Virus record (IMG/VR): IMGVR_UViG_3300030102_006934
Location: 124,001-188,000 of that record
Direction: 5' to 3' (one strand)
DNA length: 64,000 bases
The notes beneath the pieces were generated by a model that did not search any database, was not told where the DNA came from, and worked only from the letters and a program-made list of their open reading frames with translations. Made by a program: the position numbers and the translations under genes. Shown one piece after another: positions 2,966-64,000 of this stretch; position 1 is the first letter of the stretch, and each line of letters starts with the position of its first letter.

Positions 2966-5900
2966 ATGCCAATAAATTGCCCATTAGTATTAAGAACAAT
3001 TAAAGGTAGTAAATTAACTTTTAACGAATTAGACGGAAATTTTTTAAATCTTAGAAGTTGTTTATACCAATTAGAAAGTCAAATAACAACACAAGATAAT
3101 TTTGTAACAGGAGGTACTTATAATTCAACCACAGCATCCTTAGATTTTGATGGTACCGTTGGATTTACACCTTTCTCTGTGGATGTATCTTCATTAGATT
3201 CAGATAATAATGTTTTTGTTAATAGTGGAAACGCAAACGTTGCCACACAACAATTAACATTCACAAATACCACGGGAGGTACATTTAATGTTACCAATGC
3301 TGCAGCACTTTACAGTGATAACGATATTAATGTAACTGGTGGGACATATAACCCAACCAATGGTTGTGTCACATTTAGTACAAATAGTGGGTCAACTTTT
3401 GATATTTGTGGTTTTGTAACTGGGTTAACCGATACATTTATTACAGGTGCTACTTTAGTGGGAACTGTATTAGAATTAGAAAGAAATAATGGTTTGTCAG
3501 ATGTTACCGTAGATTTATCACCGTTAAGTGGGATAAGTGAAAATAACTTTGTAACTGGAGGTACATTTAATTCTGGTTCTGGAACACTATCATTATTTAA
3601 TAATAATGGTGATACTTTTAATGTCACTGGTTTTACTTCTGGTGGGGGTTCGGGTGGTGTTATAACTACTAAAAATATTTTACATGGTTTAATCACAAAT
3701 TTTGCGAGTGGTTCTAACCCCGAATTTGTAGATTGGTCAGGTACTTTGAGTCCGAGTGGGACTCATAATTCGTCATTACCCATTCCGTTTGATTTAACAA
3801 TAAAGCGGATAATGTTAAAATATTTAGATACTACATCAGCAAGTGTGGACGCCACTTTTAATTATGAAGTAAGTATTGGGAGGTTGTCTTCTAATACGGA
3901 TTCATCTGAAGATGTTAATTATGTAGATTATGTGGGAGGTTCAAATGTTGTAACCTTAACAAATGCAAATATAAATGGGACACATTTTTATAGTGATACA
4001 GGTGGTTTAAGTATTGATGTAAGTGCAGGAGATGTACTTGTGGTTAAAGGTGATAAGACTGCTGGTAATAATACAGGGGGATCTAACGAAGAGGTAATGG
4101 TTTCCATCGAATATGAAAAAACATATACAGGTACTGGTGGTGGAGCAGATACTTTCGTTACAGGAGCAACCCTAAATGGTACAGATCTAGAGATAGATAG
4201 AAATCATGGAGAACCACAAATTATAGTAGATTTATCACCGTTAAGTGCAAGTACAGTATATTGGGTTAAAGAAAATGATGGTTTGATAAGTGACTTTGCT
4301 AATGAAGGTGCTTTCTTGAGTTCATCTCCAGGTTCTGTAATAATGGGTGGTACACTTAATAGTAACTTCATAGATGACAGTAATAACTCAGTGATTCTTG
4401 GTTCTGTGGGTTCTAATGAAATAATTTCTGGTTCTTCTTCTACTATTATGTCTTCATTTGGTTCAGAAATAATAAACGAATCATACGCAGTAATAGTTGG
4501 TGGTACTATGAATAGTGTGAGTCGTACTAACCCTGGTGCGAATTCTACTTCCGAAGTTATCTTAGGTTCTAGTAATAGTGAAATAATAAACACTAATGGT
4601 GCTGCTATTATTGGTTTGGGTGGGGGGTTAATAGATGAGTCTTTTACGTCTAGTCTAATCGGTGGTTTTCAAAATGTCATAGATTCATCTAGTAGTTCGG
4701 TTATAGTTGGTGGTGTTATGAATAAACTAGATGGTATTAGTAGGTCAGTAATTTTAGGTGGTAATAATATTACTGGTACTACTAACGATACGGTTTATGT
4801 CCCTAATTTAAACATTGGAACTATTGGTAGTGGTACTCCATTGATAAATTTAGGATTAGATACTAATGGATTTGTTGTTACTGGAACTACGGGTAGTAGT
4901 AGTGGTGGAACAGATACTTTCGTTACAGGAGCCACCCTAAATGGTACGGATTTAGAGATAGATAGGAACAACGGACAATCTCAAATCACAGTAGACTTAA
5001 GTTCATTAGCTTCAGATAATAACGTTTTTGTTAATAGTGGAAACGCAGATTTTGCCACCCAACAATTAACATTCACAAACACTACAGGAGGTACTTTTAA
5101 CGTTACTAACGCAGCAGCACTTTACAGTGATAACGATATTAATGTAACAGGTGGTACTTATGATTTAACTACTGGGTGTGTTACATTTGGTACAAACAGT
5201 GGAACCACTTTTGATGTCTGTGGTTTCATAAGTGGTTTTACAGATACATTTACTACAGGTGGTACTTACGATAACACTACTGGTGAAATCACCTTTACTA
5301 AATCAGATAGTTCTACTTATGAGGTTGATTTGGGGGTTGTGTCTAATGTTACAGGATTTACATATTTAAATAATAATTTTACAATAAGTCAAAATAGTGG
5401 TTTACCAGATTTAGTATCAAACATTAGTGTTATGACAGGTTTAACTGTTAATGGTCAAACAACTATGTCAGGGGATAATCAAAATTTATTAAGTATAATA
5501 GGTTCTGGAGGTACGGAACCATTGTTAACAGTAGAAGGGTCCAATGGGGAACTATTTAGTATAAGTGATAATTTAACGGGTTCTTTATTTTCAGTTAGTG
5601 ATATATCTGGATTACCGATATTAGAGGTTTACGATGATGACACTGTCCATATAGGTAACTATCAAGCACCTTGTCTCAACACCACAGTAAAAACTAGTTA
5701 TAGTAGTGGACCCGCAGTAAAAACTATTTATTCCGTTCCTATAAGTGCTTACACTGGAGCTTTCTTTGATTACACAGTTTCTCACCCATTGGGTGTTAGA
5801 GCTGGTACTATAATGTCTATTTGGAGTGGTTCTACTGTTGAGTATAGGGAAAACGTTACAAACGATATAGGTTCCACAACACCATTAACACTTAGTGTCA

Positions 5901-5989
5901 CCTCTGATGGTTCAGAAGCTTCATTAATAGGAACATTAACTGGTACTACTGCAGGTTGGGTGGTTAAGACAATTGTAAGAAGTATATAA
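2966..5989 (+). CDS. Thr/Gly/Ser-rich virion fibre or appendage protein (1007 aa)
   Basis: N-terminal LRTIKGSKLTFNELDGNF as in phage fibre anchors; many TGGT/TGAT repeats; beta-helix-like S-x-I-x-GG repeats; internal duplications. Confidence 0.7.
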   Translation: MPINCPLVLRTIKGSKLTFNELDGNFLNLRSCLYQLESQITTQDNFVTGGTYNSTTASLDFDGTVGFTPFSVDVSSLDSDNNVFVNSGNANVATQQLTFTNTTGGTFNVTNAAALYSDNDINVTGGTYNPTNGCVTFSTNSGSTFDICGFVTGLTDTFITGATLVGTVLELERNNGLSDVTVDLSPLSGISENNFVTGGTFNSGSGTLSLFNNNGDTFNVTGFTSGGGSGGVITTKNILHGLITNFASGSNPEFVDWSGTLSPSGTHNSSLPIPFDLTIKRIMLKYLDTTSASVDATFNYEVSIGRLSSNTDSSEDVNYVDYVGGSNVVTLTNANINGTHFYSDTGGLSIDVSAGDVLVVKGDKTAGNNTGGSNEEVMVSIEYEKTYTGTGGGADTFVTGATLNGTDLEIDRNHGEPQIIVDLSPLSASTVYWVKENDGLISDFANEGAFLSSSPGSVIMGGTLNSNFIDDSNNSVILGSVGSNEIISGSSSTIMSSFGSEIINESYAVIVGGTMNSVSRTNPGANSTSEVILGSSNSEIINTNGAAIIGLGGGLIDESFTSSLIGGFQNVIDSSSSSVIVGGVMNKLDGISRSVILGGNNITGTTNDTVYVPNLNIGTIGSGTPLINLGLDTNGFVVTGTTGSSSGGTDTFVTGATLNGTDLEIDRNNGQSQITVDLSSLASDNNVFVNSGNADFATQQLTFTNTTGGTFNVTNAAALYSDNDINVTGGTYDLTTGCVTFGTNSGTTFDVCGFISGFTDTFTTGGTYDNTTGEITFTKSDSSTYEVDLGVVSNVTGFTYLNNNFTISQNSGLPDLVSNISVMTGLTVNGQTTMSGDNQNLLSIIGSGGTEPLLTVEGSNGELFSISDNLTGSLFSVSDISGLPILEVYDDDTVHIGNYQAPCLNTTVKTSYSSGPAVKTIYSVPISAYTGAFFDYTVSHPLGVRAGTIMSIWSGSTVEYRENVTNDIGSTTPLTLSVTSDGSEASLIGTLTGTTAGWVVKTIVRSI
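3200..5260 (+). repeat. intragenic duplications: ~3200-3445 with ~5012-5255, and ~4146-4230 with ~4911-4997
   Basis: near-identical DNA and peptides SDNNVFVNSGNA..AAALYSDNDINVTGGTY..CVTF..CGF and DTFVTGATLNGTDLEIDRN. Confidence 0.85.
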
Positions 5990-5991
5990 TT

Positions 5992-7077
5992 ATGGCTATT
6001 ATAGTAGAAGGTAAAAACGTACAAATATCACCTAAAGTTATAACAGATGGTTTAGTTTTTTATGTGGACCCATTTAACTTTAAATCTAGAGATAGAGATT
6101 TAGGTTTAACTGGTGGTACTATTTTTGACTTAACAAGTTCTTACCCCATGACTGGTACATTTGAGAATGAACCTACAATATCTAGTGATTTTAAATATAT
6201 AACTTTCGATGGCACTGATGATTTTATTCTATTTACTTCTAATTCTCTCGAATACCTTCAGTTACAACAACCATTTTATAGATACAAACCAAAAACATAT
6301 ACTATGTCAGCTTGGATTAAATCGGGTACAACAGGTCCTGGTGGTGTTATGTTTTGGGGTGGTGGTAATGATTATTTCCTAAAAACACCAGCATTAACCG
6401 CTAGTACGACATATACACCAGGAACTTACACGGGTGTTGTTGGTGAGAATTGGAGTGGAAAAACGGTTACACAGTCTAATAGAGATCTCCCCTCGTTTGA
6501 GGTTACGATAGATGGTAGTGGCTCAATAAGTAAAGTTGTTGCTGAAAGTATTAGAAGTATAGATGGTGGTGGTACGCCAGATAACCTAGGGGTTATTGTT
6601 AAATTATCTGGTGACACTATAGGTGGCACTACACCAGCAGATGACGCATACTTACTTTATAGGTCAGGTACATCTAGTCGTATGAGATGGGGGTTTTCTA
6701 TAGGGGTTAATTATGCTATGACGATAACAGACTCAATTAATAGAGTTACTTTTACTACAAATAGAGTGAGTAATGAACCGAATGAATGGAATTTAATTAC
6801 TATTACAGATACGGGAATATTAGAACCAAATAATTTAAAATGTTATGTTAATGGGGAATTGGTTAATCAAGCTGCCTCTACATTCTTAAATGGTTCACAA
6901 ATGAGACCTGGAACTATTAATTCAGGACAACTACATATTGGTAAGGGTGCTGCTTCTCTTTTTAGTAGTTTCTTGAAGGGTAGTTTAGGTGCTTGTATGG
7001 TATATGATAGAGCTTTAACTGGTGAAGAAATATTGAGGAATTATAATACAATAAAAAGTAGATTCGATTTATCATGA
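5992..7077 (+). CDS. LamG/concanavalin A-like virion protein
   Basis: ITDGLVFYVD, YITFDGTDD, TMSAWIK, YVNGEL, VYDRALTGEEILRNYN. Confidence 0.75.
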   Translation: MAIIVEGKNVQISPKVITDGLVFYVDPFNFKSRDRDLGLTGGTIFDLTSSYPMTGTFENEPTISSDFKYITFDGTDDFILFTSNSLEYLQLQQPFYRYKPKTYTMSAWIKSGTTGPGGVMFWGGGNDYFLKTPALTASTTYTPGTYTGVVGENWSGKTVTQSNRDLPSFEVTIDGSGSISKVVAESIRSIDGGGTPDNLGVIVKLSGDTIGGTTPADDAYLLYRSGTSSRMRWGFSIGVNYAMTITDSINRVTFTTNRVSNEPNEWNLITITDTGILEPNNLKCYVNGELVNQAASTFLNGSQMRPGTINSGQLHIGKGAASLFSSFLKGSLGACMVYDRALTGEEILRNYNTIKSRFDLS

Positions 7078-7874: not shown

Positions 7875-7876
7875 TT

Positions 7877-13783: not shown

Positions 13784-14335
13784 TTAATTTTCGTATTCAA
13801 AGTCTAATCCACTTTGTCTTTTTTCATATTCTTCGGAATCTAAACCAGCCTCATACATCCTACCTTCTTCGAAACCTTTATTATATACAATTTCCTTTAT
13901 TTCATTAAATTCTTTTTCGGCTTGGTCTTTACCTTCTTCTTCTCCTTCTTTAAGTCCATCAGCGTAACCTTCATCGTATCCTTCATCGTGAGCGTTGAGT
14001 TTCGCATCAAGCATATCATCTTCACAGTCATCCTTTCCTTCTCTAAAACCTTCATTGTAACCCTCTCTATGACCTTCTCCCCAAGCCAACTGTTTACCAT
14101 CTTCTTGTGAGGTTTCTGCCACTTGTTTTATTATATCGGTCAATAGATTCAGTTCTTTATTTAATAAACCTAATCCATGTACTTTTTTGGCGATATGATT
14201 TAAAAACCAATTGCTGGCCCCATAGTCAGTTATAACATCAATCTTATCCTCTATTTGTTCTACACTAATAGGTTCAACATCTTTAGTCCAATCAAAATCA
14301 TTTTCTTTTAATATTTTCTTAATAGTATTTCTCAT
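13784..14335 (-). CDS. acidic protein with FliH/Yae1-like GxxxG repeats, KILKE leader and DFDWTKDV motif
   Basis: GHREGYNEGFREG, GYDEGYADGLKEG; late motif at 14344-14351 (-). Confidence 0.6.
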   Translation of the reverse strand: MRNTIKKILKENDFDWTKDVEPISVEQIEDKIDVITDYGASNWFLNHIAKKVHGLGLLNKELNLLTDIIKQVAETSQEDGKQLAWGEGHREGYNEGFREGKDDCEDDMLDAKLNAHDEGYDEGYADGLKEGEEEGKDQAEKEFNEIKEIVYNKGFEEGRMYEAGLDSEEYEKRQSGLDFEYEN

Positions 14336-14343: not shown

Positions 14344-14363
14344 ATAAATATTGTGATATTTAT
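14344..14363. promoter_or_regulatory. back-to-back divergent late promoters
   Basis: ATAAATAT-tgtg-ATATTTAT between divergent starts at 14335 and ~14368. Confidence 0.65.
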
Positions 14364-14367
14364 GAAT

Positions 14368-37426: not shown

Positions 37427-38935
37427 TTAACACCAATCTTTTTCAGAAACTATTTCAAATGGTATAATGTCTTGGTAGGTTCTTACCTCATTACCAGAGG
37501 TTATTTTAAACTCCATGTAATAGTCGTTGGGAATTAACCAAGATGTATCAATAAAGAAGAAATTACCGTCTGGGGTTCTACTAACTTCATTCCATTCAAC
37601 GTAAGGTATTTCTATTTCACCCTCTTTAATGTATATTCTGTAAAATATACCGTCTAAAGCTTGTGATTGGTCGTATGTGAAAGGTATTCTAGCAATCACA
37701 TTAACTCTTCTAGTATCACCTCTTTTAATTTTTTCCCTTCTTTGGATTCCATTAAAGGCGAATTCATAATCAAATATAGATAGGTTGTTGGAATCACCCA
37801 CACCTAGTCCAGAAGCTCCAGCACTATTGTTAGAACCTATGTTATAATAAGAATCTTGTTCTTTAACAATAAAGTCTAATTCTATATCACCCAAATTATT
37901 ACCATCTATTGTAACACCACTCCAAGTATCATAGAATTGTATATTACCACAATAATTAGATGTCTTTGGCACATTTACTGAAACACAATAAACACCAGTA
38001 CTGACTTGTGTGATACCAGATGGTGATATCACCTCATAAATTTCATCTTCATGGTCATATATGGTAACACCTGAGATATCAGCATTTACTCTCTCACCAC
38101 CAGCATTTACATATAGACATAAATTGTTGCTCTTATTGATTATAAAGTTGTCTCTGTCATCTTTTATAGTATCATCGTATAAAGTCTCCATAAACGGTTC
38201 GTATACGGTCTGAGTGTCTTTTGTGAAGAATCCTACATAAAATGTATCTTCAGATAACACATTTTCTTCAATATATTCAAAAGCTACACCTAAATTAGCT
38301 TCGGTTACACCACTACTAATTAATCCATTGATGTAATCAGATACGTCTATACATAAATTTTCACTACCCCTATCAAAATGTTGTGTTCCTTTAATTAGGT
38401 TCACAGTGGTTCCAGTATAACCAGATGTAGAACCAGAATACCAAGCTGATGGAATGGTGTATACACCTAGTTGAGACCATGGGGTATTAAATTCCCTATC
38501 TTCCCAATTGGCAGCTCCCTCACAATATGGTTTGTCACCATCATCACAAGTAACGACACTAGATTCGATATAGTCATAACCATTACCTTCATCCCACGAC
38601 TCAGGTATTTCAAATAATATTAAATTAAATGAGGTTGCTCTTTTAACGTGACCACAAGAACTAGACACAGTTTTACAATAAGTTTCTTTATCGAAACAAG
38701 AAGTGTTAGTAATTTTAATTTCATGAGTCATTTTGTCTGTAAACAACTCTTTATTATCTTTTTTTTGTATTAAATCAGTTAGGTCTATGTTAAAAAGGTA
38801 TCTAGAATATGTTAATCTATTACCATCCAAAGAACCACCGTGAAATATCTCAGCTATTGGGTTTCTACCTGTATTAGCACAAGAGTTTTTGACTATTACA
38901 GTATCTTTATTAAAATATGTTCTATAAACACTCAT
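37427..38935 (-). CDS. virion structural protein (DNRLRE-like domain plus Ig-like C-terminus), Cys-rich
   Basis: SRYLFNIDL...WDEGNG...ANW...W..G pattern; late motif at 38950. Confidence 0.55.
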   Translation of the reverse strand: MSVYRTYFNKDTVIVKNSCANTGRNPIAEIFHGGSLDGNRLTYSRYLFNIDLTDLIQKKDNKELFTDKMTHEIKITNTSCFDKETYCKTVSSSCGHVKRATSFNLILFEIPESWDEGNGYDYIESSVVTCDDGDKPYCEGAANWEDREFNTPWSQLGVYTIPSAWYSGSTSGYTGTTVNLIKGTQHFDRGSENLCIDVSDYINGLISSGVTEANLGVAFEYIEENVLSEDTFYVGFFTKDTQTVYEPFMETLYDDTIKDDRDNFIINKSNNLCLYVNAGGERVNADISGVTIYDHEDEIYEVISPSGITQVSTGVYCVSVNVPKTSNYCGNIQFYDTWSGVTIDGNNLGDIELDFIVKEQDSYYNIGSNNSAGASGLGVGDSNNLSIFDYEFAFNGIQRREKIKRGDTRRVNVIARIPFTYDQSQALDGIFYRIYIKEGEIEIPYVEWNEVSRTPDGNFFFIDTSWLIPNDYYMEFKITSGNEVRTYQDIIPFEIVSEKDWC

Positions 38936-43444: not shown

Positions 43445-44257
43445 TTACTCCACGTTTTCCCCTGCGTATTTTATTCCTCTATCGTTTTTAAAATAACATT
43501 CTTTCTTTGAGGTATTGTACCAAAACTTGGATTCTAGTGGGTCCATGAAGTACTCTTTATCGTTTTTATATTTCCAAAATAAAGAATTCTCTCTCATATT
43601 ATATTTTTTATACCCTATTTTGGGTATAGTCATCATTGTTTTATCATAATAAGACATCCTTAGTAGGAATTCATAATTAAAGAACATTTTTACACTAGAC
43701 TTTAAACCACCCACCGAATTAAATGCTTCTGTTTTGATTATAGAACCACAAACTTGAAAGTTGGGGAAATTTAATAATGAGTCATAGTCTACGTAACCCA
43801 TTTTTTCACTAAAATCTCTTGCCCAGACAGGTTCATTACTAAAGTGTAAGAATTGATTTTCTTCATTCACATCTAACACTATAGGTAAGAATAAATCAAC
43901 ATTTTGATAGTGTTCTCTGTACTCGATGAAATTATCGAACCATATAGAAGAGTAAATATCATCCACTTCTAGAATTGAGAACCATTCGGTTTTACAATTT
44001 TCTACACCTAAATTTACTTGGCTAGAAAAATCTGTATCACCTTCATTTTCTAATACTGTTGTTATAGATTTAATTTCATCTGAAAAATCATAAGAGTCTA
44101 AAGTTTTTTTAGCGTCACTATTTTTAGGTACAACGATTAATAATTTTTCTACACCAACCTTTTGGTCCTCAATACTTTTTACGGCGTTAGCAAATAAATC
44201 TTTTTCTTTTTCATCCAATGTTAATATTGGCATTATTACTGTTAAATTAGTTTCCAT
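43445..44257 (-). CDS. glycosyltransferase family 2 (GT-A)
   Basis: LTVIMPI, AVKSI..Q, NLGVE..KTEWFSILEVDD. Confidence 0.8.
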   Translation of the reverse strand: METNLTVIMPILTLDEKEKDLFANAVKSIEDQKVGVEKLLIVVPKNSDAKKTLDSYDFSDEIKSITTVLENEGDTDFSSQVNLGVENCKTEWFSILEVDDIYSSIWFDNFIEYREHYQNVDLFLPIVLDVNEENQFLHFSNEPVWARDFSEKMGYVDYDSLLNFPNFQVCGSIIKTEAFNSVGGLKSSVKMFFNYEFLLRMSYYDKTMMTIPKIGYKKYNMRENSLFWKYKNDKEYFMDPLESKFWYNTSKKECYFKNDRGIKYAGENVE

Positions 44258-44260
44258 TTT

Positions 44261-45364
44261 TTAATTATTTTTTTCTTCTAAATTATTAACCTCATATTTG
44301 GCTAAAGTTTCTTTTATTTCTTTTTCTCTATTACTAAAAAGTTCACCATAAACAGATTCTACAGAACTTTTCATAATTGTTTCAGAGTAATCATCTACAG
44401 TTGTATCCATCTCCGAGAATATATCAGAAGGAACTGCGTCCTCCAACCAAGATTGTAGATATTGTGATAGTAATTCTGGGATAATGACTGTATTATCTAC
44501 CCATATACCATTTTTTTCGGTAATCCACCCATTTGATAGGTTAGGTAACTTACCAATGACAGGAGTTCCACAAGCCATTGATTCGATTGGAAATGTTCCG
44601 AATCCAGCTATATCATCAACCCATATAGAAACACACGACTCTTTTAAAGCTTCTGAAAAAACATCTTTTGTCATTCCACGCATATCTCTAAATGTAATCC
44701 ACTTTAAATGTGGATACTTAATATAAAAGTTTTTAAATATCTTAACAGTATCTCTTTGGTCTCTAGTCATTATAGCTACTATTGGTTTTTTTGGTTCGGT
44801 ATTTTTAACAAACCTTTTGTCGATACCCACTGGTACTACATTAGTGGTTACTTTACCATTAAAAAGATTGTCTATATACTCTTTTTGTTTTTCTGTTGTA
44901 GTCACACAATCAGTAATACCGTAATCTAACCAAGTCTTACCTGGTTGTAATGTTTCTGTTATATAATCATATGATTGGCAAAACACAACTCTTTTACCTG
45001 GTAAATTAACTGTCTGTTCCATAACATTAGCAAATAATTCTGGTACCATAATAATATCCGTCATATTTATTTTAACTTCTTTATCTTCTATCGATACGTG
45101 TGACAAAGAAGAGTATTCTTCACCTAACCAAGATTTAACATACTCTAGTTGTTTAGTTGAGTATTCATTTTTTTCATGTAATATATGTGCTTGGTAACCT
45201 AGTTCTGTTAACATTTTGACATGTTCATATATGTTAGCCACAGCACCAGTCGGTGCACCATTTGTGTCAATTACGAAGAAGTAGATTGAAAAATCTTTTT
45301 CTTCCATTTTCTTTAAATTTGTTTTTAATGTTTCTACAATTTCTTGTGTGTTTAATTTATCCAT
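44261..45364 (-). CDS. glycosyltransferase, GT-B (GT4-like)
   Basis: GAVANIYEH...GFGTFPIESMACGTPVI. Confidence 0.8.
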   Translation of the reverse strand: MDKLNTQEIVETLKTNLKKMEEKDFSIYFFVIDTNGAPTGAVANIYEHVKMLTELGYQAHILHEKNEYSTKQLEYVKSWLGEEYSSLSHVSIEDKEVKINMTDIIMVPELFANVMEQTVNLPGKRVVFCQSYDYITETLQPGKTWLDYGITDCVTTTEKQKEYIDNLFNGKVTTNVVPVGIDKRFVKNTEPKKPIVAIMTRDQRDTVKIFKNFYIKYPHLKWITFRDMRGMTKDVFSEALKESCVSIWVDDIAGFGTFPIESMACGTPVIGKLPNLSNGWITEKNGIWVDNTVIIPELLSQYLQSWLEDAVPSDIFSEMDTTVDDYSETIMKSSVESVYGELFSNREKEIKETLAKYEVNNLEEKNN

Positions 45365-45710
45365 TTTTCTTTATTAATTTGTTTTTTAGTAATGTATTAA
45401 AGGCTAACCTAAAAGGTATTGATAGTTGGCTTTCCAACTTTCTAAAACCCATTGACTCGTCTATAATACCATTTTCTTGTAAAAGTGATTCTATTAACGC
45501 TCTAACTGTTTCCCATTTTACAACATCAATCATTTGACCACCACTATCTGGGTTTGGGATCATATATTCAATTTCAGTATTACCAGACAATACATTTATT
45601 TCTCTCCTCTCCAATATCTCATCTATTGTCGGTTCCATTTTTATGAAATTAGATATTTTATCTAAATCTAGATAATACTCTTCGTCAGCTATATTAAATA
45701 ATTTACCCAT
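45357..45710 (-). CDS. hypothetical protein
   Basis: ORF in operon, overlapping the next gene. Confidence 0.6.
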   Translation of the reverse strand: MGKLFNIADEEYYLDLDKISNFIKMEPTIDEILERREINVLSGNTEIEYMIPNPDSGGQMIDVVKWETVRALIESLLQENGIIDESMGFRKLESQLSIPFRLAFNTLLKNKLIKKNG

Positions 45711-45750
45711 ATTTTATATTTAATTAATTTTTATCATATGTAAACAGTTT

Positions 45751-46449: not shown

Positions 46450-46451
46450 AA

Positions 46452-47234: not shown

Positions 47235-47298
47235 AAAATTTTATTATTAAATTAATTTAATAATGAAAATATACTAACATTATGTACAATGTACACAG

Positions 47299-47613
47299 TT
47301 ATTTAATAAAGGATTTTGGATCGTCAAAGAAATCTAGACTGTTAAATGTTTTGTCATCGACAAAAATATCAAAAAATGGTTTATCTAACCTTAATTCATG
47401 GTATTTCACACCAAAGTCTTTTAATTGTTGTTCAGTTAGTACCCTCCAATCAATACCACTAACTGCTCCTCTAGCAGTCCACATTGTTATATGATGGCCC
47501 TCATCATATAATTTATTCACTATATCTATATTTTTTTTTATCGGTTTAGATGAGTTGTAATCCGTTTTTTTAGTGTTGAAAATGGTTTCATCTATATCTA
47601 CGAATATTTTCAT
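47299..47613 (-). CDS. small HAD phosphatase (capsule-biosynthesis type)
   Basis: FVDIDETI, WTARG, KP..DIFVDDK. Confidence 0.8.
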   Translation of the reverse strand: MKIFVDIDETIFNTKKTDYNSSKPIKKNIDIVNKLYDEGHHITMWTARGAVSGIDWRVLTEQQLKDFGVKYHELRLDKPFFDIFVDDKTFNSLDFFDDPKSFIK

Positions 47614-48257
47614 TTCTTTATATTTGTGAATTTCATTATTTTATTATTGATAGTAATGTTCACATCACCAAATAGATTAGTTATGGAATCTTCGGTGAAA
47701 AAACTATAATGAGGGTTAGTTGAACTTTCCACAATACGATCTTTAGTTTTACAATAAGGAACTTCAAACACGAAGTATTTACTAACATTTTTAACAAATT
47801 GTACGAAGTCTTTTAATTGGTTTGTTGGTATGTGTTCTAAAGTGTGTATACAAAATAAAATATCAATATCTTTAGTTAATAGTGTTTCTTTATTTTCGTG
47901 AAATTCTATATAATTAGGTAATTCGTTTTTGATTATATCATGTGAATACAATGATATTTTTGGAAAATTTTTATTTACCTTCTTGAGGAAATCATAATTA
48001 GGTGGGGTACCTATCTCCAATAAGTTATTAATACTTATGTTTATTTTAGATAAATATTTAATATATGAATCGTTCCTAATTAAATTATTACCAAAACCAC
48101 TGACATGACTTTTTTGATGTTGGCTAATTTCTTCGTGTGAATAACCTTCGCAATCAACAAAAGTAAAATAACAATTAGAACATTTTAAAATATCACAATC
48201 AATTAGTTTATGTTTTAAAATATTATTTGTTACTGATTCACATATTGGGCATTTCAT
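47610..48257 (-). CDS. SAM-dependent methyltransferase with N-terminal Zn ribbon
   Basis: CPIC..CSNC, LLEIG, HTLEHIP, FVFEVP. Confidence 0.75.
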   Translation of the reverse strand: MKCPICESVTNNILKHKLIDCDILKCSNCYFTFVDCEGYSHEEISQHQKSHVSGFGNNLIRNDSYIKYLSKINISINNLLEIGTPPNYDFLKKVNKNFPKISLYSHDIIKNELPNYIEFHENKETLLTKDIDILFCIHTLEHIPTNQLKDFVQFVKNVSKYFVFEVPYCKTKDRIVESSTNPHYSFFTEDSITNLFGDVNITINNKIMKFTNIKK

Positions 48258-49267
48258 ATCAATTCCATCAACTTATCAAATACATTATGTGTCTCATTTA
48301 TTTCAATAAAATTATTATTATTTGTATCATCACAGAAATACCTTAATTTGGGGTGAGAGACTAAACTAATCGTTTTAATACCTAAACCATGAGACATCAT
48401 TTGACTATGTCCAGCACTACACAGTATTGTTTTCACTTTGGAATAGTTTTCTTTTATTTTAGTCTCATTACCACTAGAATTGTCTAATAATGGTATGTTA
48501 ATATTTGACGACCTTAAGTGGTTATAGAAATTTTTACTACCATCGTGGGACATATAAGCCACAGGTATATTTTTAGTGATACAATATTTAACTAATTTTG
48601 TTAATTCACTGTAAAATTTTGACTTACCTATTTTACCATATCTCCTCCATTCACGGTCATCTTTAATCTCTATAGTAATAAATTTTTTATTTTCTTCATC
48701 CATACTTGACGACCAAAACTCTTTTACATACCATATACTTGGGCAAAATTCAAATTTTACTTTATCAGAAAAATCAGAACCAATAATACCTAATAAACTA
48801 TTTCTATCACCATTATGTCTCATGGAGAAATGTTCGGCTTTATTTATCAATTTCTTAATGTTTTCTTTAAACAATGGTAATTTACTCTCTGTTTTAATTG
48901 AATTCTCTCTAGAAGACATAGTCATATCTTGCCCATAAAATAGGTTATAACCAATCGATATAACGTAAATTGGTTTATCAATCTTATCGTACATATCTTT
49001 AGGTATTACCCACTGCCAACCCGAAACATTGTTTGGTGCTGAATCAGGTAATATTAAACCACCCCCTCCAACTAATATGTAGTCAAACTTATTTAGTGAA
49101 TTTATTTTAGTTTCATTAAATGTGACTCTACAATCGAAATCAGTAAACTCACAATCAACACCGTCTAAGTATTTTTCTTGAAAATATTTCTTAGTTGACT
49201 TCCCTAGTATTAGGTCACCACTGTTGAATTTGGCTTGTGAGGCATATATATGTGCTATTTTTATCAT
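48254..49267 (-). CDS. polysaccharide pyruvyl transferase family protein
   Basis: NSGDLIL, ILVGGGGLI, SIG, FSMR, HS..MSHGLG. Confidence 0.7.
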   Translation of the reverse strand: MIKIAHIYASQAKFNSGDLILGKSTKKYFQEKYLDGVDCEFTDFDCRVTFNETKINSLNKFDYILVGGGGLILPDSAPNNVSGWQWVIPKDMYDKIDKPIYVISIGYNLFYGQDMTMSSRENSIKTESKLPLFKENIKKLINKAEHFSMRHNGDRNSLLGIIGSDFSDKVKFEFCPSIWYVKEFWSSSMDEENKKFITIEIKDDREWRRYGKIGKSKFYSELTKLVKYCITKNIPVAYMSHDGSKNFYNHLRSSNINIPLLDNSSGNETKIKENYSKVKTILCSAGHSQMMSHGLGIKTISLVSHPKLRYFCDDTNNNNFIEINETHNVFDKLMELI

Positions 49268-50115
49268 TTTCTAAGTGATTTTTGTTTTAATAATTCACCA
49301 CCCATTACTTTTCTTGGTCCATAACCTCCCATAGCTTTTTCAATATCCCTAATTGATTTAACTAATTTTATTAAACCTTGTGGTTCTACTGAAGCCATTT
49401 GGTCTGACCCCCATAAAGTTCTATCTGTTGTTATATGACGTTCAACCCACGTAGAGCCCAATAATATTGTGGAAACAGTTGTCATTAGACCAAACTCATG
49501 TCCTGAATAACCTACATCGACATTGGGTTTAGCTATAACATCTTTTATCCACTTTATATACTCTAAATTTAATTCATCTACTTGGGATGGGTATGTAGAG
49601 TTTGTATGCATTATTAAGTTTGGGTTACATGTATCTACACACTTAACAATCTCTTCTTCAGTACTCATACCAGTACTAATAATTAGGTATCTACATTTTT
49701 CTCTAGCATAAGAACATAAATCTAAATCAGTAATTAGAGCTGAGGGTATTTTCATTATGTCAGTAAATTTAGACATAAAGTCAACAGAATCTTTATCCCA
49801 AACTGAAGCAAACCATTTAATACCTTTTAACTTACAATAATTATCAATGTTAACATAATCACTATGTGTTAACTCTATATCTTTTTTATAATCTAAGTAA
49901 GTTATTTCTTCATCCCTCCATGGAACATTTTTAGGTTTATTTTTTTGTTCTTCTGGTACGCACACAATGGGGTTTCTTTTTTGAAACTTAACGTAATCAC
50001 AACCAGAAATGTAAGCTACATCAATTAATTTTTTAATGTTATCTAAAAAACCACTCTTATCTTTACCGTAAGCAAAATTAATACCAATCTCACCTATTAT
50101 TTTTGTCCTTTCCAT
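49264..50115 (-). CDS. neuB: nonulosonate (sialic acid-type) synthase, NeuB family, lacking the C-terminal SAF domain
   Basis: EIGIN, VKFQKR, KIPSA, ISTGM, HTNSTYP, GYSGHE, VERHIT, SDQMAS. Confidence 0.9.
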   Translation of the reverse strand: MERTKIIGEIGINFAYGKDKSGFLDNIKKLIDVAYISGCDYVKFQKRNPIVCVPEEQKNKPKNVPWRDEEITYLDYKKDIELTHSDYVNIDNYCKLKGIKWFASVWDKDSVDFMSKFTDIMKIPSALITDLDLCSYAREKCRYLIISTGMSTEEEIVKCVDTCNPNLIMHTNSTYPSQVDELNLEYIKWIKDVIAKPNVDVGYSGHEFGLMTTVSTILLGSTWVERHITTDRTLWGSDQMASVEPQGLIKLVKSIRDIEKAMGGYGPRKVMGGELLKQKSLRK

Positions 50116-50741
50116 TTTAAAACGTCTTTTTTTGTATCAATGTCTATAATATCGTCATTATTTATGGTAAAATAAATAGTATCTTCATTATATAAGTTAT
50201 TATTTAGTCTAGGTAGTTCTTCGATATTAAAAATAGTTACGTAATGTGTTAATTCGAATACTTTAGGGTAATCCTGTCTTCTATATAAATTATGTGGTGT
50301 TATTTGTTTACCATTAATACCATCCTCTACCATTAAAAGATATGGGTGGATACCATCATAAGGTTTTTTACATAATAATGATTTAGCTTCATTATCAATA
50401 AAGTATTCATAACTGTCAACAACATCACCCCATTTTCTAGTTGGGTATACAACGTATAACATAATACAATTACCCTTAGTTACACCTAAACTATTAAAAA
50501 ATGATAACATAGTGTCTTTAGTTGATGTCTTATCACCAGAATATTTGGGGGGTCTTGGTACGTGTTTGTAATTTTTGTATTTATCTATGATAAATTCATC
50601 GTCACTGTAAATGTAAACATTATCTTTATATTTCGATGGTATAGTTCTTAATGTTTGTTCTATTAGTAACCTATTTTTGAAGGGTACCCCCTTGGACCCC
50701 TTTCTAGCGGGAATAACTATAATATCATCCTTTGTAAACAT
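50097..50741 (-). CDS. neuA: CMP-nonulosonate synthetase (acylneuraminate cytidylyltransferase)
   Basis: IPARKGSKGVPFKN, RRQD.P, IDIDT..D. Confidence 0.88.
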   Translation of the reverse strand: MFTKDDIIVIPARKGSKGVPFKNRLLIEQTLRTIPSKYKDNVYIYSDDEFIIDKYKNYKHVPRPPKYSGDKTSTKDTMLSFFNSLGVTKGNCIMLYVVYPTRKWGDVVDSYEYFIDNEAKSLLCKKPYDGIHPYLLMVEDGINGKQITPHNLYRRQDYPKVFELTHYVTIFNIEELPRLNNNLYNEDTIYFTINNDDIIDIDTKKDVLKWKGQK

Positions 50742-51375
50742 GACCCTCTAGTTTGAAATTAATAAATGGGTTTATACTATAAACATTAACACCCAAAGAC
50801 TTTAATTTTTCTTTTAATATAACAGTATCCCTATCTAATTTATTCAACCATTCCTTATATTGTGACCAATCACTCCAAGGGGTTTCACTAATATTTTTAT
50901 AATAGTTTTTGAATGTGTGTTGCCCATCTAAAATACCGTGGTCAACTCCTATCAAAATAATGTTTTTAGCACCTAAATGATATGCGAAATGTATAGAAGA
51001 TGTTATAGTGGAATCACTAACAACTAAATGGTTGGGTTTATCGAAAGCTTTCAAATTTATTCTACTAACGTTAACTAAGTGGTCAAAATAATATAGTTTA
51101 TTTATATTATTATTTACATCTAAGGGTACCCCAGAGCCACAATTAAGTCTAGCCACTATTATATCAGAATTAGAATTTTTTAAAGTATCTCGTATTAGAG
51201 AATGTTCCTTCCTAACAATATAACTAGTATCAAATTTTCTGTAAGTTTGATTAGTTCCTACAGAAATTTTATTTTCTAAGAATGAGGGGTCTATAAAATC
51301 ACAAGATGGACCAGAACCAATAACATATATATCCTCCCCCTTATGTATGTTTTTAAATTTATTTATATCCTCCAT
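50725..51375 (-). CDS. Maf/DUF115-like putative nonulosonate transferase
   Basis: FKNIHKGE.IYVIGSGPS, AYHLGAKNIILIGVD. Confidence 0.7.
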   Translation of the reverse strand: MEDINKFKNIHKGEDIYVIGSGPSCDFIDPSFLENKISVGTNQTYRKFDTSYIVRKEHSLIRDTLKNSNSDIIVARLNCGSGVPLDVNNNINKLYYFDHLVNVSRINLKAFDKPNHLVVSDSTITSSIHFAYHLGAKNIILIGVDHGILDGQHTFKNYYKNISETPWSDWSQYKEWLNKLDRDTVILKEKLKSLGVNVYSINPFINFKLEGHVYKG

Positions 51376-51394
51376 TTATAGTTCTAATTTAGTT

Positions 51395-52072
51395 TTACCC
51401 CCATTTTTTATTAAAATTTTTACTTAAACCATGTGTCATTTCATTTTGTTTTTTAGGGTCAACTAATCCATGACTTTTACTTAAATGATGTAAAACTATA
51501 GAGTTTTTTATTAACCCATGTTTAATTTTATACTTTTGTAGATTCATAGAGTAGTCATTGTCTTGATACCAAAAAGAAAATTGTTCATCAAAATTACCTA
51601 TAATATCAATAACTTTTCTATTTAGTAAAATAGACCAGCCAGTCAATTCGTATGAAGTTCTATAACCATAAAAAACTTCTTTCTTCTCTTTAAAATTACT
51701 TTTATGGACATTCCATATTGGACAATAGGGGGACATTGATAATAATTCGTTGTCCTTTTCAAACTGTTTTAACATTTCTGAAAACCAACCACCAACGTAC
51801 TCAGTGTCATTATTAGATATCAATATCCATTCGTTTGTACAATAATTTAAACCTATATTTAAGAATTTATTATAATTAAATTCTCCTTTAGGTACGATGG
51901 TTTCGACCTCATCATAGTCGTACTTATATTTACCTGTTTTTTCTGTTTCTATAAGTTTTATACTAAAATTATGATTTTTTTCAGAGTTTAAGATACTCTC
52001 AACACACTGTTTAGTCATATTGTAAATTCTATCATCTTTTGTGTAAGTCAATAAAATAACATCTATTTTCAT
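51395..52072 (-). CDS. glycosyltransferase family 2
   Basis: IDVILLT, NIGL..CTNEWILISNND, FDEQF.FWYQDND. Confidence 0.85.
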   Translation of the reverse strand: MKIDVILLTYTKDDRIYNMTKQCVESILNSEKNHNFSIKLIETEKTGKYKYDYDEVETIVPKGEFNYNKFLNIGLNYCTNEWILISNNDTEYVGGWFSEMLKQFEKDNELLSMSPYCPIWNVHKSNFKEKKEVFYGYRTSYELTGWSILLNRKVIDIIGNFDEQFSFWYQDNDYSMNLQKYKIKHGLIKNSIVLHHLSKSHGLVDPKKQNEMTHGLSKNFNKKWG

Positions 52073-62362: not shown

Positions 62363-63511
62363 ATGAGTTTAATTATATCTGATTCTGAAAGAGAAAAATT
62401 GTTTAGACAAGTAAAACACCGATTAGGTGCACCAATAAGAAAAATCGAGTTAGAGGATGAAATGTTGGAAACCTTATTAGAGATTTCAATAGAAGATCAT
62501 TCGTCTTACATAAATGAGTGGTTAATAGAATCACAGTGGACTTCTTTATATGGTAAAGATTTGACCACAACAGATTTAACCAAAGCTTTAACAGTTAGAG
62601 AAATGGCCTATGAAGATTCTTTTACTTATGCCTATTCTAAGATTGTTGGGTTACAGGCTAGAGGTCCTTGGGAACTTAAAAAAGATTATGTCACAGTTAA
62701 AGCTGGGCAACAAGTTTATGAAATACCAGCAGGTAGAGAAATAAATGAAGTTTTATGGATTACACCACCTACAATAGATCACGCACTTTATGCTTCATAT
62801 GGTTTTGGGGATGCAGGTTTTGGTGGTGGTTTTGGTCAACTACCCTTCGCTGGTGGGGGTGGAGGTTTGGGATATGGAGGATTCTTTTTAGGTTCTTCTT
62901 ACGATATTTTAAGTAGAGACGCCGATTATAGTCTAAAACAAAGAATTATTTCTGGTGATTTAATTTATAAAATAACGGCTGGAGCAAATGGTACTAAATT
63001 ACTACATCTAATACCACCCCCAGGTTCAAGAATAATCTTTGGTACAATCGGTGGAGGAAGAAATGGTATTGATGTCACAGGTAGTAAGGTTTGGTACCAT
63101 TATTATGAAACTAAAGATGACGATGACAGAAAAAGATGTCTTAATGATAATAAGGATATAGTTAAATTACCTTCAGACGTTCCTATTGATGTTGTTGACT
63201 TTGATGAATTAAATACACCCTCCAAACAATGGGTTAGAGATTATTTTACGGCTATGTGTAAAGAAACCCTAGGTAGAGTTAGAGGTAAATTTAGTGGTTC
63301 TTTAGGTATAACTGACGCAGATGTTACTATGGATTATGATTCATTATTAAATGAGTCTAAAGAAGATAAAGATAAACTTTGGGAAAGACTGAAAGAAAGA
63401 TTAGAAAGACTAAGACCAGACAAGATGTTAGAAAGAAAGGCTTTAGAGGCAGAAAATTTAAACAAGTCATTACAATTTAGACCGTTGGGTCATCATTGGA
63501 ACGTTATTTAA
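62363..63511 (+). CDS. neck/head-completion protein (T4 gp13-like)
   Basis: RLGAPIRKIEL..E, WVRDY..A.CKE.LG.VRGKF; late motif at 62341. Confidence 0.75.
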   Translation: MSLIISDSEREKLFRQVKHRLGAPIRKIELEDEMLETLLEISIEDHSSYINEWLIESQWTSLYGKDLTTTDLTKALTVREMAYEDSFTYAYSKIVGLQARGPWELKKDYVTVKAGQQVYEIPAGREINEVLWITPPTIDHALYASYGFGDAGFGGGFGQLPFAGGGGGLGYGGFFLGSSYDILSRDADYSLKQRIISGDLIYKITAGANGTKLLHLIPPPGSRIIFGTIGGGRNGIDVTGSKVWYHYYETKDDDDRKRCLNDNKDIVKLPSDVPIDVVDFDELNTPSKQWVRDYFTAMCKETLGRVRGKFSGSLGITDADVTMDYDSLLNESKEDKDKLWERLKERLERLRPDKMLERKALEAENLNKSLQFRPLGHHWNVI

Positions 63512-63513
63512 TT

Positions 63514-64000
63514 ATGTCAGGAATTTTTAATACAAGACCTAGGTTTCAAGATAGAGATATGAAACAAATGAGTGGTGACACTATGACACTTTCTGGTGAC
63601 ACCATAATCACAGGTAATTTAGCGTATAATAATGGCGCTACTATTGGTTATGTTTTAACAGCTATAGACACTAATGGTAATGTTGGTTGGTCACCATTAT
63701 CATCGGTAACACCAGGTATTTTTTGGACTTCTGGTTCAACTAACTTAAGTAATATAATTGCTGACAATGGTACTGGTACGGATGCTACAGGTCAGTTTGC
63801 GGTCTCTTGGGGTAAGGGTAATTTGTCTAGTGGATTTCTTTCTACCTCCATGGGTCAAGATAATTTAGCTTCTGGACCTACTTCTTTAGCTCAAGGTAGG
63901 GATACTATAGCTTCTGGTTTTTATTCACATTCACAAGGTTCTCTAACTAAGGCTAGTGGTGATAGTTCTCACGCGGAAGGTGATAATACTTTAGCTAGTG
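63514..64000 (+). CDS. fibre protein with YadA-head-like repeats (runs off the window; not in ORF track)
   Basis: hand-translated MSGIFNTRPRF..GYVLTA..GNVGW..ASG..S.AQG..T.ASG..SHAEG 14-residue repeats. Confidence 0.75.
   Translation, partial: MSGIFNTRPRFQDRDMKQMSGDTMTLSGDTIITGNLAYNNGATIGYVLTAIDTNGNVGWSPLSSVTPGIFWTSGSTNLSNIIADNGTGTDATGQFAVSWGKGNLSSGFLSTSMGQDNLASGPTSLAQGRDTIASGFYSHSQGSLTKASGDSSHAEGDNTLAS

What the first reader, a model, noticed from the sequence alone, without database searches (positions are those of the whole stretch)
2966..64000. Pervasive (S/T)-G-x-T motif in outer virion proteins: candidate glycosylation sequon
Seen: about 20 or more copies in the 1007-aa fibre (TGGT, TGAT, TGLT, TGFT, SGST, SGTT). 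It also occurs in unrelated folds: LamG (TGGT, SGTT, SGDT), the MCP insertion (SGGT, SGTT), 37427 (SGST, SGYT, TGTT, SGVT x3, SGIT) and 63514 (SGDT x2, SGST, SGPT). It appears rare in the enzymes. Recurrence across non-homologous structural proteins points to an enzyme-recognised signal more than a fold repeat. Inference: acceptor site for the phage glycosyltransferases.
Basis: inference. Interest (0 to 1): 0.6.

Follow-up and report, generated by a model that had tools for sequence, protein, structure and literature searches.

The report
Recurring Ser/Thr-Gly-x-Thr motif on virion surface
A four-residue motif, (Ser/Thr)-(Gly/Ala)-x-Thr, is the most over-represented short pattern in the exposed virion proteins of this 380-kb jumbo phage and its relatives; it may be a sugar-attachment site, but sequence alone cannot separate that from a structural habit of these proteins.

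Summary
In the window, [ST]G.T occurs 23 times in the 1007-aa fibre (4.5 expected), 7 times in the 502-aa protein (0.5 expected), 4 times in the LamG protein and 4 times in the 3'-open fibre.

- **Survives composition control.** Against 12-residue local shuffles the whole 380-kb genome shows 2.1x (z about 9). The reversed motif and close permutations stay at 1.0.
- **Top pattern.** Of 48,000 three-residue patterns, SG.T and TG.T rank first and second across this phage and two relatives (62% MCP identity).
- **Sharp specificity.** Position 1 is S/T (not D), position 2 is G then A (not N/D), position 4 is T only (not S/V/I). Hydrophobic residues flank it and Pro is avoided.
- **Placement.** Sites sit in lineage-specific exposed parts (MCP insertion, sheath outer domains) and move between orthologues while their density is kept.
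- **Controls.** T4 (1.1x) and Mel-JY01 (0.7x) lack it; immuto and RM378 show it weakly.

The glycosylation reading is plausible but unproven.

- Three glycosyltransferases are core genes beside the baseplate genes, so co-occurrence cannot be tested.
- The NeuB part of the cluster is dispensable.
- Non-virion proteins do not avoid the motif.
- In the fibre, the motif is part of a sequence repeat.

A lineage-specific beta-strand-entry habit remains a serious rival.

The parts
2966..5989 (+). 1007-aa fibre-like protein with 23 [ST]G.T sites, mostly inside repeated units (VTGGTY-type and DTFVTGATL-type). Residues about 97-170 are duplicated at about 701-775, and 393-420 at 648-675.
   Evidence: No Pfam or PHROG hit. 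Paralogues elsewhere in the genome at 101-108 kb. No homologue in relatives G1/G2.
5992..7077 (+). 361-aa protein with a C-terminal LamG/concanavalin-like domain. Its 4 sites (aa 40, 111, 155, 206) all lie N-terminal to the Pfam-matched LamG core (aa 232-347).
31604..33406 (+). gp23-type major capsid protein with a long insertion. It has 2 sites (aa 122, 319), both in the insertion.
   Evidence: In 70 orthologues all 101 motifs map to reference aa 111-340 (40.4 expected from that region's composition). None map to the conserved cores (10.6 expected).
37427..38935 (-). 502-aa tandem beta-sandwich protein next to the gp5-like spike gene. It has 7 sites: 3 in a disordered loop (aa 160-177) and 4 at or in beta-strands.
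63496..63999 (+). N-terminal 168 aa of a 552-aa fibre that runs on to genome position 189154. It has YadA-head-like repeats and a Peptidase_G2 intramolecular-chaperone domain. 4 sites lie in the window and 6 in the whole protein.
43445..44257 (-). GT-A (GT2-like) glycosyltransferase, 270 aa, conserved in relatives G1 and G2.
   Evidence: Pfam PF10111/PF00535. phmmer 1e-58 and 4e-80 to G1/G2.
44261..45364 (-). GT-B (GT1/GT4-like, weak Pfam hit) glycosyltransferase, 367 aa. Core gene of the clade, about 11 kb downstream of the MCP.
   Evidence: Orthologue in 21 of 34 clade records; the 13 without are short fragments (6-23% complete). No homologue in 50,697 cultured-phage records.
52072..53616 (-). 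514-aa enzyme with two GT-A domains (aa 15-185 and about 236-436), conserved in G1 and G2.
   Evidence: The second domain is 24% identical (pairwise E 1e-10) to the GT domain of mycobacteriophage Myrna gp234.
47610..52072 (-). Accessory sugar module specific to this phage: methyltransferase, pyruvyl transferase, NeuB-type nonulosonate synthase, PseF-like cytidylyltransferase, MptE/Maf-like protein (at threshold) and a small GT2.
   Evidence: Absent from G1/G2, which keep the motif.

Best explanation
**What is shown.** Phi-[ST]-[GA]-x-T-Phi (x and the following residue not Pro) is a short linear motif under positive selection in this jumbo-phage lineage. It lies in the surface-exposed, fast-evolving parts of virion proteins: fibres, baseplate-associated beta-sandwich proteins, the outer domains of the tail sheath and the insertion of the capsid protein.

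**Most likely mechanism (inferred, not shown).**
- The motif marks strand-loop-strand elements that serve as acceptor sites for cytoplasmic O-glycosylation.
- The enzymes would be the clade's three core glycosyltransferases (43445-44257, 44261-45364, 52072-53616), acting before or during assembly.
- In this phage, the NeuB/cytidylyltransferase/pyruvyl/methyl module may decorate the glycan further.
- Selection would then act on the number of sites, a glycan coat, and not on their exact positions.
For: - **Statistics.** 2.0-2.4x over local shuffles in three genomes (z 8-15), with the reversed and permuted motifs at 1.0. SG.T and TG.T rank 1 and 2 of 48,000 patterns by minimum z over three genomes.
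- **Specificity.** Position 1: S 2.35, T 1.95, D 1.09. Position 2: G 2.14, A 1.48, N 1.02, D 1.08. Position 4: T 2.14, S 1.04, V 0.99, I 0.87.
- **Against a plain turn.** A positive-phi turn would let N/D replace G. Beta-propensity would let V/I replace T. An Asx/ST-type turn would let D replace S/T. None of these is seen.
- **An independent check.** [ST]A.T is 3.6x in the 12 motif-rich non-fibre proteins, which were not selected on that pattern.
- **Non-homologous carriers**.
- **Exposed placement.** All 101 motifs of 70 MCP orthologues lie in the insertion. Sheath sites lie outside the conserved core.
- **Turnover with kept density.** 36 orthologues of the 502-aa protein carry 128 motifs in 29 site clusters, with a maximum occupancy of 24/36. 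The mean is about 3.5 per protein vs 0.58 expected. 19.5% of motifs fall in the 4.5% of residues that are lineage-specific insertions.
- **Not generic.** Non-virion proteins of the same phages are at 1.03x, T4 at 1.1x and Mel-JY01 at 0.7x.
- **Protein-level signal.** Codons at the motif follow genome usage.
- **Enzymes.** Core GTs lie beside the baseplate genes. The second domain of the 514-aa GT has its only cultured-phage relatives among GTs of Myrna-type mycobacteriophages and Gordonia phages, plus one coliphage (ECP1). Myrna virion proteins are reported glycosylated (PMC12363180).
Against: - No direct evidence of modification.
- GT acceptors cannot be read from sequence. PDB, NCBIfam and Atlas searches gave only generic GT-A/GT-B matches. 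The same enzymes could act on DNA or on host glycans, and the genome has a thymidylate-synthase-family gene.
- Co-occurrence is confounded with ancestry because the GTs are core genes.
- immuto (1.6x) and RM378 (1.9x) lack homologues of these GTs yet show weak enrichment. In immuto this comes partly from GDGSGLTGIT-type fibre repeats.
- Mel-JY01 has five GT genes and no enrichment.
- Non-virion proteins do not avoid the motif.
- Hydrophobic flanks and the fibre repeats fit a structural role.
- At some aligned sites N replaces G in orthologues.
- The reported mycobacteriophage sites are C-terminal tails (as cited in PMC12619734), not internal motifs.
Confidence: 0.4

Rival explanations
1. Structural idiom. 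[ST]-G-x-T is a preferred way to enter or bridge beta-strands in the lineage-specific beta-rich modules of these virion proteins. Hydrophobic residues at -1 and +4 point into the core and the two hydroxyl residues face solvent. The idiom spread by module shuffling and repeat expansion, and no enzyme reads it.
For: - Hydrophobic enrichment at -1 (V 78 vs 34; also F, I, L) and +4 (Y, F, I), with Pro excluded.
- In fibres of all three phages the motif heads repeated shaft units.
- Weak enrichment in immuto and RM378, which lack these GTs. The widespread GDGSGLTGIT-type fibre repeat carries the motif.
- T4 gp37 shows 6 vs 2.07.
- In the AF2 model, 4 of 7 sites sit at strand entries or in strands at pLDDT above 90.
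- N replaces G at some aligned sites.
Against: - General structural preferences should appear in all beta-containing proteins. Non-virion proteins of the same phages are at 1.03x, T4 overall at 1.1x and Mel-JY01 at 0.7x.
- Single-residue specificity at three positions, without the expected substitutes (D at position 1, N/D at 2, V/I at 4), and with Ala as second choice at position 2.
- Structural contexts in the one good model are mixed: a disordered loop, after a helix, mid-strand and strand entry. None is a two-residue hairpin.
- Sites are gained and lost freely while their number is kept.
Confidence: 0.35
2. The motif is read by something other than a glycosyltransferase. Candidates are another modifying enzyme (for example a kinase or acyl/methyl transferase), an assembly chaperone, or the motif itself contacting a host surface ligand.
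For: The same sharp specificity and lineage restriction as above. A methyltransferase and a pyruvyl transferase are encoded nearby. Nothing ties the GTs to protein acceptors.
Against: No conserved candidate enzyme was identified. The methyl and pyruvyl transferases are absent from G1/G2. The motif occurs on capsid, sheath, baseplate and fibres alike, which argues against a receptor-contact role.
Confidence: 0.12
3. Statistical artefact of repeats, shared ancestry and S/T/G-rich low-complexity segments, with no selection on the motif itself.
For: 36% of the sites in this genome lie in one repeat-bearing fibre family. Orthologue counts are not independent. Choosing proteins with 3 or more sites is circular.
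Against: - Local 12-residue shuffles and the reversed-motif control remove composition effects.
- The ratio is 1.71x (z 6.7) without the fibre family, and site flanks are unrelated.
- The three genomes carry largely non-homologous motif-rich fibres.
- 17 proteins have 3 or more sites vs 5.2 expected under a Poisson null.
Confidence: 0.05

Closest known systems
Virion O-glycosylation of mycobacteriophages (Che8, Corndog, Myrna)
   Same: Phage-encoded GTs lie next to structural genes, and glycans on capsid and tail proteins shield virions (PMC12363180; PMC12619734). The second GT domain of 52072-53616 is distantly similar to Myrna gp234.
   Different: The reported sites are C-terminal tails of the capsid and tail-tube subunits. 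Here the candidate sites are internal four-residue motifs spread over many proteins, and the MCP has no S/T-rich C-terminal tail. The GT similarity is weak (24% identity over one GT-A domain). Nothing has been shown experimentally for this lineage.
Aah/TibC heptosylation of AIDA-I/TibA/Ag43 autotransporters
   Same: Cytoplasmic O-glycosylation of many Ser/Thr residues in beta-rich repeat proteins. [quoted passage not shown] That geometry matches Phi-[ST]-G-x-T-Phi.
   Different: Aah has no sequence consensus, whereas here the sequence is sharply defined. The window's GTs gave GT2 and GT1 matches, not a heptosyltransferase family.
General O-glycosylation sequon of Bacteroidota, D-(S/T)-(A/I/L/V/M/T) (own knowledge, not tested here)
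   Same: A short sequon used on many unrelated proteins. The likely hosts of this phage group are Bacteroidota; the nearest cultured relative infects Flavobacterium.
   Different: It is a different motif and a periplasmic host system that phage proteins made in the cytoplasm should not meet.
Phage tail-fibre repeats of the GDGSGLTGI type (Pfam Phage_fiber_2; the Pfam assignment is own knowledge)
   Same: A fibre repeat that contains S-G-x-T. It is seen in Flavobacterium phage immuto. The window's fibre also carries the motif inside repeats.
   Different: The window's fibre has no Pfam hit. Most sites outside the fibre family are not in repeats.
Flagellin glycosylation with nonulosonic acids by Maf proteins (own knowledge for the Maf role)
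   Same: A NeuB-type synthase, a PseF-like cytidylyltransferase and an MptE-like (Maf-type) domain protein sit side by side.
   Different: The MptE-like hit is at threshold (34.7 vs 34.6 bits) in a 216-aa protein. The module is missing from relatives that keep the motif. Flagellin sites have no such consensus.

Membership tests
Enzyme-read acceptor motif (sequon) | Over-representation beyond global and local composition, with position-specific residue requirements | tested here: met
Enzyme-read acceptor motif (sequon) | Motif residues carry the modification | not testable with these tools
   Needs glycoproteomics of virions or of co-expressed proteins
Enzyme-read acceptor motif (sequon) | Motif presence follows presence of the enzyme across lineages | tested here: inconclusive
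   The three GTs are core to the clade. NeuB is dispensable. Outgroups with other GTs range from 0.7x to 1.9x.
Enzyme-read acceptor motif (sequon) | Avoidance of the motif in proteins that should stay unmodified | tested here: not met
   115 observed vs 112 expected in non-rich proteins of three genomes. Avoidance is not obligatory for a sequon.
Mycobacteriophage-type virion glycosylation | Phage GT genes adjacent to virion genes | tested here: met
Mycobacteriophage-type virion glycosylation | Acceptors are S/T-rich C-terminal tails of the capsid and tail-tube subunits | tested here: not met
   MCP sites are internal (aa 122, 319) and the C-terminus has no such tail. The tail tube was not examined.
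Mycobacteriophage-type virion glycosylation | GT homologous to those of Che8/Corndog/Myrna | tested here: inconclusive
   Only domain 2 of the 514-aa GT matches Myrna gp234, at 24% identity and pairwise E 1e-10.
Aah/TibC-type protein heptosylation | Heptosyltransferase-family enzyme | tested here: not met
   Pfam gave GT2-type and GT1-type matches only for the window's GTs.
Aah/TibC-type protein heptosylation | [quoted passage not shown] | tested here: inconclusive
   Hydrophobic flanks fit. In the one usable model the contexts are mixed.
Fold or sequence repeat of a fibre shaft | Motif copies lie at equivalent positions of repeated sequence units | tested here: met
   Met for the fibre 2966-5989 and its paralogues and for fibres of G1/G2. 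Not met for the 12 other motif-rich proteins, whose flanks share at most 6 of 16 residues and mostly 1-3.
Two-residue beta-hairpin turn (type I'/II') | Gly position also accepts Asn/Asp, and sites form 2:2 hairpins | tested here: not met
   [ST]N.T is 1.02x, [ST]D.T 1.08x and Ala 1.48x. None of the 4 confident sites in the AF2 model is a 2:2 hairpin (small sample).
Maf/nonulosonate glycosylation | Synthase, cytidylyltransferase and Maf-type transferase present and conserved with the target motif | tested here: not met
   Present in this phage but absent from G1/G2, which keep the motif.

The most novel reading that the evidence does not exclude
A whole lineage of jumbo phages, probably infecting Bacteroidota, coats its virion surface with O-glycans attached at a defined sequon, Phi-[ST]-[GA]-x-T. 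Three core phage glycosyltransferases would read it. The sites drift between positions while their number is kept, like the shifting glycan shields of animal viruses. This would be the first sequence-defined acceptor motif for phage virion glycosylation. It would allow glycosylated phage proteins to be predicted from sequence.
Probability: 0.35. Interest if true: 0.8.

Novelty: new variant of a known kind. Interest (0 to 1): 0.6.

Why it matters
Virion glycosylation is so far documented in only a few phages, and no acceptor motif is known for it. If this motif is the acceptor, glycosylated surfaces of uncultured phages could be read from genomes. The three core GTs would gain a testable substrate. 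The turnover of sites would point to selection by host or environmental binders on a sugar coat.

If the motif is structural, it is still the strongest lineage-specific sequence idiom in these proteomes. It would then be a useful marker of exposed, fast-evolving modules in unannotated virion proteins.

Tried and rejected
- **DNA-level cause.** Rejected. Codons at S/T, G and T follow genome usage apart from a shift among Ser codons: AGT is raised and TCA depleted (4 of 92 vs 26% genome-wide).
- **Avoidance in non-virion proteins.** Not found.
- **Link to the NeuB module.** Rejected. Two complete relatives lack it and keep the motif.
- **'Any GT predicts the motif'.** Rejected.
- **Natural GT-less clade member.** None found. 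All 13 records without the GT are fragments.
- **AF2 of fibre aa 1-420 with a 5-row paralogue alignment.** Failed at pLDDT 35, so the fold of the fibre repeat is unknown.
- **The search for related loci for the 903-aa protein L010.** Nothing found.
- **tblastn of the 44261 GT, the 43445 GT and the 502-aa protein against cultured phages.** No match.
- **PDB sequence search for the three GTs.** Nothing useful.
- **Myrna motif count (1.65x).** Discarded. My naive ORF calls are unreliable at 65% GC, and one site-bearing ORF is out of frame with the annotated gene.
- **Freeman et al. 2023.** Not held, so it is cited only through papers that describe it.
- **Identity with the 'moraphages' of PMC12619734.** Could not be established.
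Full report
**Setting**

The window is bases 124001-188000 of a 380,343-bp IMG/VR phage record rated complete. GC content is about 31%. The phage is a distant T4-type myovirus. It has a gp23-type capsid protein with a long insertion (31604-33406), a portal, a large terminase, a gp5-like spike protein and a family-B DNA polymerase.

The nearest cultured relatives by capsid protein are at only 42-44% identity: an uncultured phage (LR756508), Microcystis phage Mel-JY01 and Flavobacterium phage immuto. IMG/VR holds at least 598 closer relatives. I fetched two complete ones, G001 (296 kb) and G002 (345 kb, terminal repeats), both about 62% identical in the capsid protein. They are called G1 and G2 below.

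**The observation**

Counts against 1000 within-protein shuffles:

| Protein (window coordinates) | Observed | Expected | p |
|---|---|---|---|
| Fibre 2966-5989 | 23 | 4.46 | <0.001 |
| LamG protein 5992-7077 | 4 | 0.92 | 0.004 |
| 502-aa protein 37427-38935 (-) | 7 | 0.47 | <0.001 |
| 3'-open fibre 63496-63999 | 4 | 0.64 | 0.001 |
| Capsid protein 31604-33406 | 2 | 0.70 | not significant |

All other window proteins have 0 or 1 site. Genome-wide there are 171 sites. Seventeen proteins hold 137 of them, against 25.8 expected. Under a Poisson null, about 5 proteins would reach three sites.

The motif-rich set includes these proteins:
- the tail sheath;
- fibres with YadA-head-like repeats and a Peptidase_G2 chaperone domain;
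- LamG proteins;
- two paralogous triads of large unannotated proteins.

**Is it more than composition?**

Yes. With shuffles confined to 12-residue blocks, which keep local S/T/G richness, [ST]G.T stays at 2.0-2.1x in this genome, 2.4x in G1 and 1.9x in G2 (z 8-15). The reversed motif T.G[ST], [ST]G.S, G[ST].T, [ST]GT and [ST]N.T all stay near 1.0.

Six three-residue geometries give 48,000 patterns. Ranked by the smallest z over the three genomes, SG.T and TG.T come first and second. The next ones are generic helix patterns.

A pooled position scan used 503 sites against 235 expected:

| Position | Favoured | Not favoured |
|---|---|---|
| -1 | V, F, I, L | charged and polar residues |
| 1 | S 2.35x, T 1.95x, N 1.41x | D 1.09x |
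| 2 | G 2.14x, A 1.48x | N 1.02x, D 1.08x |
| x | mild A, G, L, D | Pro (4 vs 18) |
| 4 | T 2.14x | S 1.04x, V 0.99x, I 0.87x |
| +4 from the first residue | Y, F, I | Pro |

Codons at the motif follow genome usage apart from a shift among Ser codons (AGT raised, TCA depleted), so the signal is at the protein level.

**Repeats or independent sites?**

Both occur. In the 1007-aa fibre the motif heads repeated sequence units, and whole blocks are duplicated within the protein and in paralogues at 101-108 kb of the genome. Fibres of G1 and G2 are not detectably homologous to it, yet they carry similar TGGT-headed units. For fibres, then, the motif is a feature of a shaft repeat.

Outside that family the flanks of sites within one protein are unrelated: at most 6 of 16 residues are identical, and usually 1-3. 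The genome-wide ratio without the family is still 1.71x (z 6.7). In those 12 proteins the variant [ST]A.T, on which they were not selected, is 3.6x.

**Where the sites lie**

- **Capsid protein.** In 70 orthologues all 101 motifs map to the insertion (reference aa 111-340; 40.4 expected from that region's composition). None map to the conserved gp23 core (10.6 expected).
- **Tail sheath.** In the three sheath proteins, sites lie outside the conserved C-terminal core.
- **LamG protein.** The four sites precede the Pfam-matched domain.
- **Internal or non-virion proteins.** The portal and the terminase are not enriched.
- **502-aa protein family.** 36 orthologues carry 128 motifs in 29 site clusters. 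No cluster is occupied in more than 24 sequences. 19.5% of motifs fall in the 4.5% of residues that are lineage-specific insertions. The mean is about 3.5 per protein against 0.58 expected. Density is kept while positions move.

An AF2 model of the 502-aa protein (34-row alignment, pLDDT 76) is a chain of beta-sandwich domains. Three sites sit in a disordered loop. One follows a helix, two precede strands and one is inside a strand. None is a two-residue hairpin.

**Controls in other phages (12-residue local shuffles)**

| Genome | [ST]G.T ratio | Note |
|---|---|---|
| This phage (G000) | 2.10x | z 9.3 |
| G1 | 2.44x | z 15 |
| G2 | 1.92x | z 8.3 |
| RM378 | 1.91x | only 30 sites |
| immuto | 1.58x | TG.T only, partly from GDGSGLTGIT-type fibre repeats |
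| LR756508 | 1.34x | |
| T4 (99 kb, rich in virion genes) | 1.11x | |
| Mel-JY01 | 0.71x | |

Non-rich proteins of the three clade genomes are at 1.03x. The motif is therefore not a general property of proteins or of phage virion proteins. It is strongest in this clade, and there is a weaker echo in two phages of related hosts.

**The glycosyltransferases**

The minus-strand block 43445-53616 encodes these proteins:
- a GT2-like enzyme;
- a GT1-like enzyme;
- PhoH;
- a methyltransferase;
- a pyruvyl transferase;
- a NeuB-type synthase;
- a PseF-like cytidylyltransferase;
- an MptE/Maf-like protein, at threshold;
- a small GT2;
- a 514-aa enzyme with two GT-A domains.

G1 and G2 keep only the GT2-like enzyme, the GT1-like enzyme and the two-domain enzyme. 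They also keep two flanking genes, 42667-43440 (unannotated) and 45751-46449 (NT5C-like 5'-nucleotidase). They lack NeuB and its neighbours.

The GT1-like gene is found in 21 of 34 clade records. The other 13 are short fragments, 6-23% complete. It is therefore a core gene, and no GT-less relative is available for comparison. All four outgroup phages also carry GT1 or GT2 genes of other kinds, so having a GT does not predict the motif.

None of the three core GTs has a close solved or named relative. The second domain of the 514-aa enzyme has its only matches among cultured phages in the annotated GTs of Myrna-type mycobacteriophages and Gordonia phages, plus one coliphage (ECP1). The pairwise match to Myrna gp234 is 24% identity at E 1e-10. 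Myrna is one of the phages reported to have glycosylated virion proteins (PMC12363180). This link is weak.

The genome also has a thymidylate-synthase-family gene. DNA therefore cannot be excluded as the target of the GTs.

**Weighing the readings**

Evidence for an enzyme-read site:
- Specificity is sharp at three positions, and the substitutes a structural role would allow are missing. D does not replace S/T, N/D do not replace G, and V/I do not replace T. Ala is the second choice at position 2.
- The motif is restricted to exposed parts of virion proteins of one lineage.
- Sites turn over while their density is kept.
- Core GTs lie beside the virion genes.

Evidence for a structural idiom:
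- The flanks are hydrophobic and Pro is excluded.
- The motif sits inside fibre repeats.
- There is a weak echo in phages without these GTs.
- Several sites are well ordered in the model.
- N replaces G at some aligned sites in orthologues.

The two readings are not exclusive, since a GT could read a hairpin-like element. I put the sequon reading at about 0.4, the purely structural reading at about 0.35, another reader at about 0.12 and artefact at about 0.05.

**Novelty**

Phage virion glycosylation and bacterial O-glycosylation sequons are known kinds. A defined internal sequon spread over the virion surface of a jumbo-phage lineage would be a new variant. As it stands, the finding is a robust, lineage-specific motif whose function can be tested directly by co-expression and mass spectrometry.

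**Limits**

- Genes were called as longest non-overlapping ORFs. This is adequate at 30-35% GC but failed for Myrna at 65% GC, so that control was dropped.
- Orthologue counts are not independent events.
- Only one usable structure model was obtained.
- The large protein searches, read mapping and complex prediction were not used.

Noticed in passing
window 13784-14335 (-) and 14353-16242 (+); genome-wide in G000, e.g. C1:100503-100946, 113578-114792, 328734-333102, 359234-373500: A second striking linear motif, DFDW[VI][KR]D, occurs in 25 proteins of the genome (DF.W 41 observed vs 5.1 expected). It usually follows an N-terminal IRKILKEE-like helix at residues 1-20. It also occurs several times inside very large proteins, as if marking domain starts. 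It could be a targeting, packaging or processing signal.
   Followed up: partly
window 47610-52072 (-): A nonulosonic-acid module (NeuB-type synthase, PseF-like cytidylyltransferase, MptE/Maf-like protein at threshold, pyruvyl transferase, methyltransferase, small GT2). It is present in this phage but absent from two complete relatives. Homologues of the synthase, the cytidylyltransferase and a HAD-like gene occur in the uncultured phage LR756508.
   Followed up: partly
G000:C1:45140-51293 and 272905-279466: Two paralogous triads of large motif-rich virion-type genes (25-35% identity, same order). These may be alternative tail-fibre or baseplate sets.
   Followed up: no
window 52072-53616 (-): The 514-aa glycosyltransferase has two GT-A domains. 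Two-domain GT-A enzymes often add two different sugars or polymerise a disaccharide (own knowledge). Domain 2 resembles the GT of Myrna-type mycobacteriophages.
   Followed up: partly
window 63496-63999 (+), continuing to G000:C1:189154: A fibre with YadA-head-like AxGxxSxAxG repeats (the source of the HA.G and SH.E pattern enrichments) and a C-terminal Peptidase_G2 intramolecular-chaperone domain, as in self-cleaving tailspikes and neck appendages.
   Followed up: partly
L150-L159 (Microcystis phage Mel-JY01): This outgroup lacks the motif but shows strong GT.G (122 vs 18.9) and SG.S (100 vs 32) enrichment. That pattern suggests collagen-like or S/G-rich repeat proteins. The phage carries five GT genes.
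   Followed up: no
window 42667-43440 (-): An unannotated 257-aa protein next to the GTs. It is conserved in G1 and G2 and also in immuto, Mel-JY01 and LR756508, so it is an older core gene and not part of the sugar module.
   Followed up: no
G000:C1:121021-122061 (-), just upstream of the window: A thymidylate-synthase-family gene (321 bits). Whether it is a true ThyA or a pyrimidine hydroxymethylase matters for whether the GTs could act on DNA.
   Followed up: no
whole lineage: A 2025 paper describes 'moraphages': aquatic jumbo phages with predicted Bacteroidota hosts and four core glycosyltransferase orthogroups (PMC12619734). Whether this is the same lineage could not be settled from the text.
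   Followed up: partly
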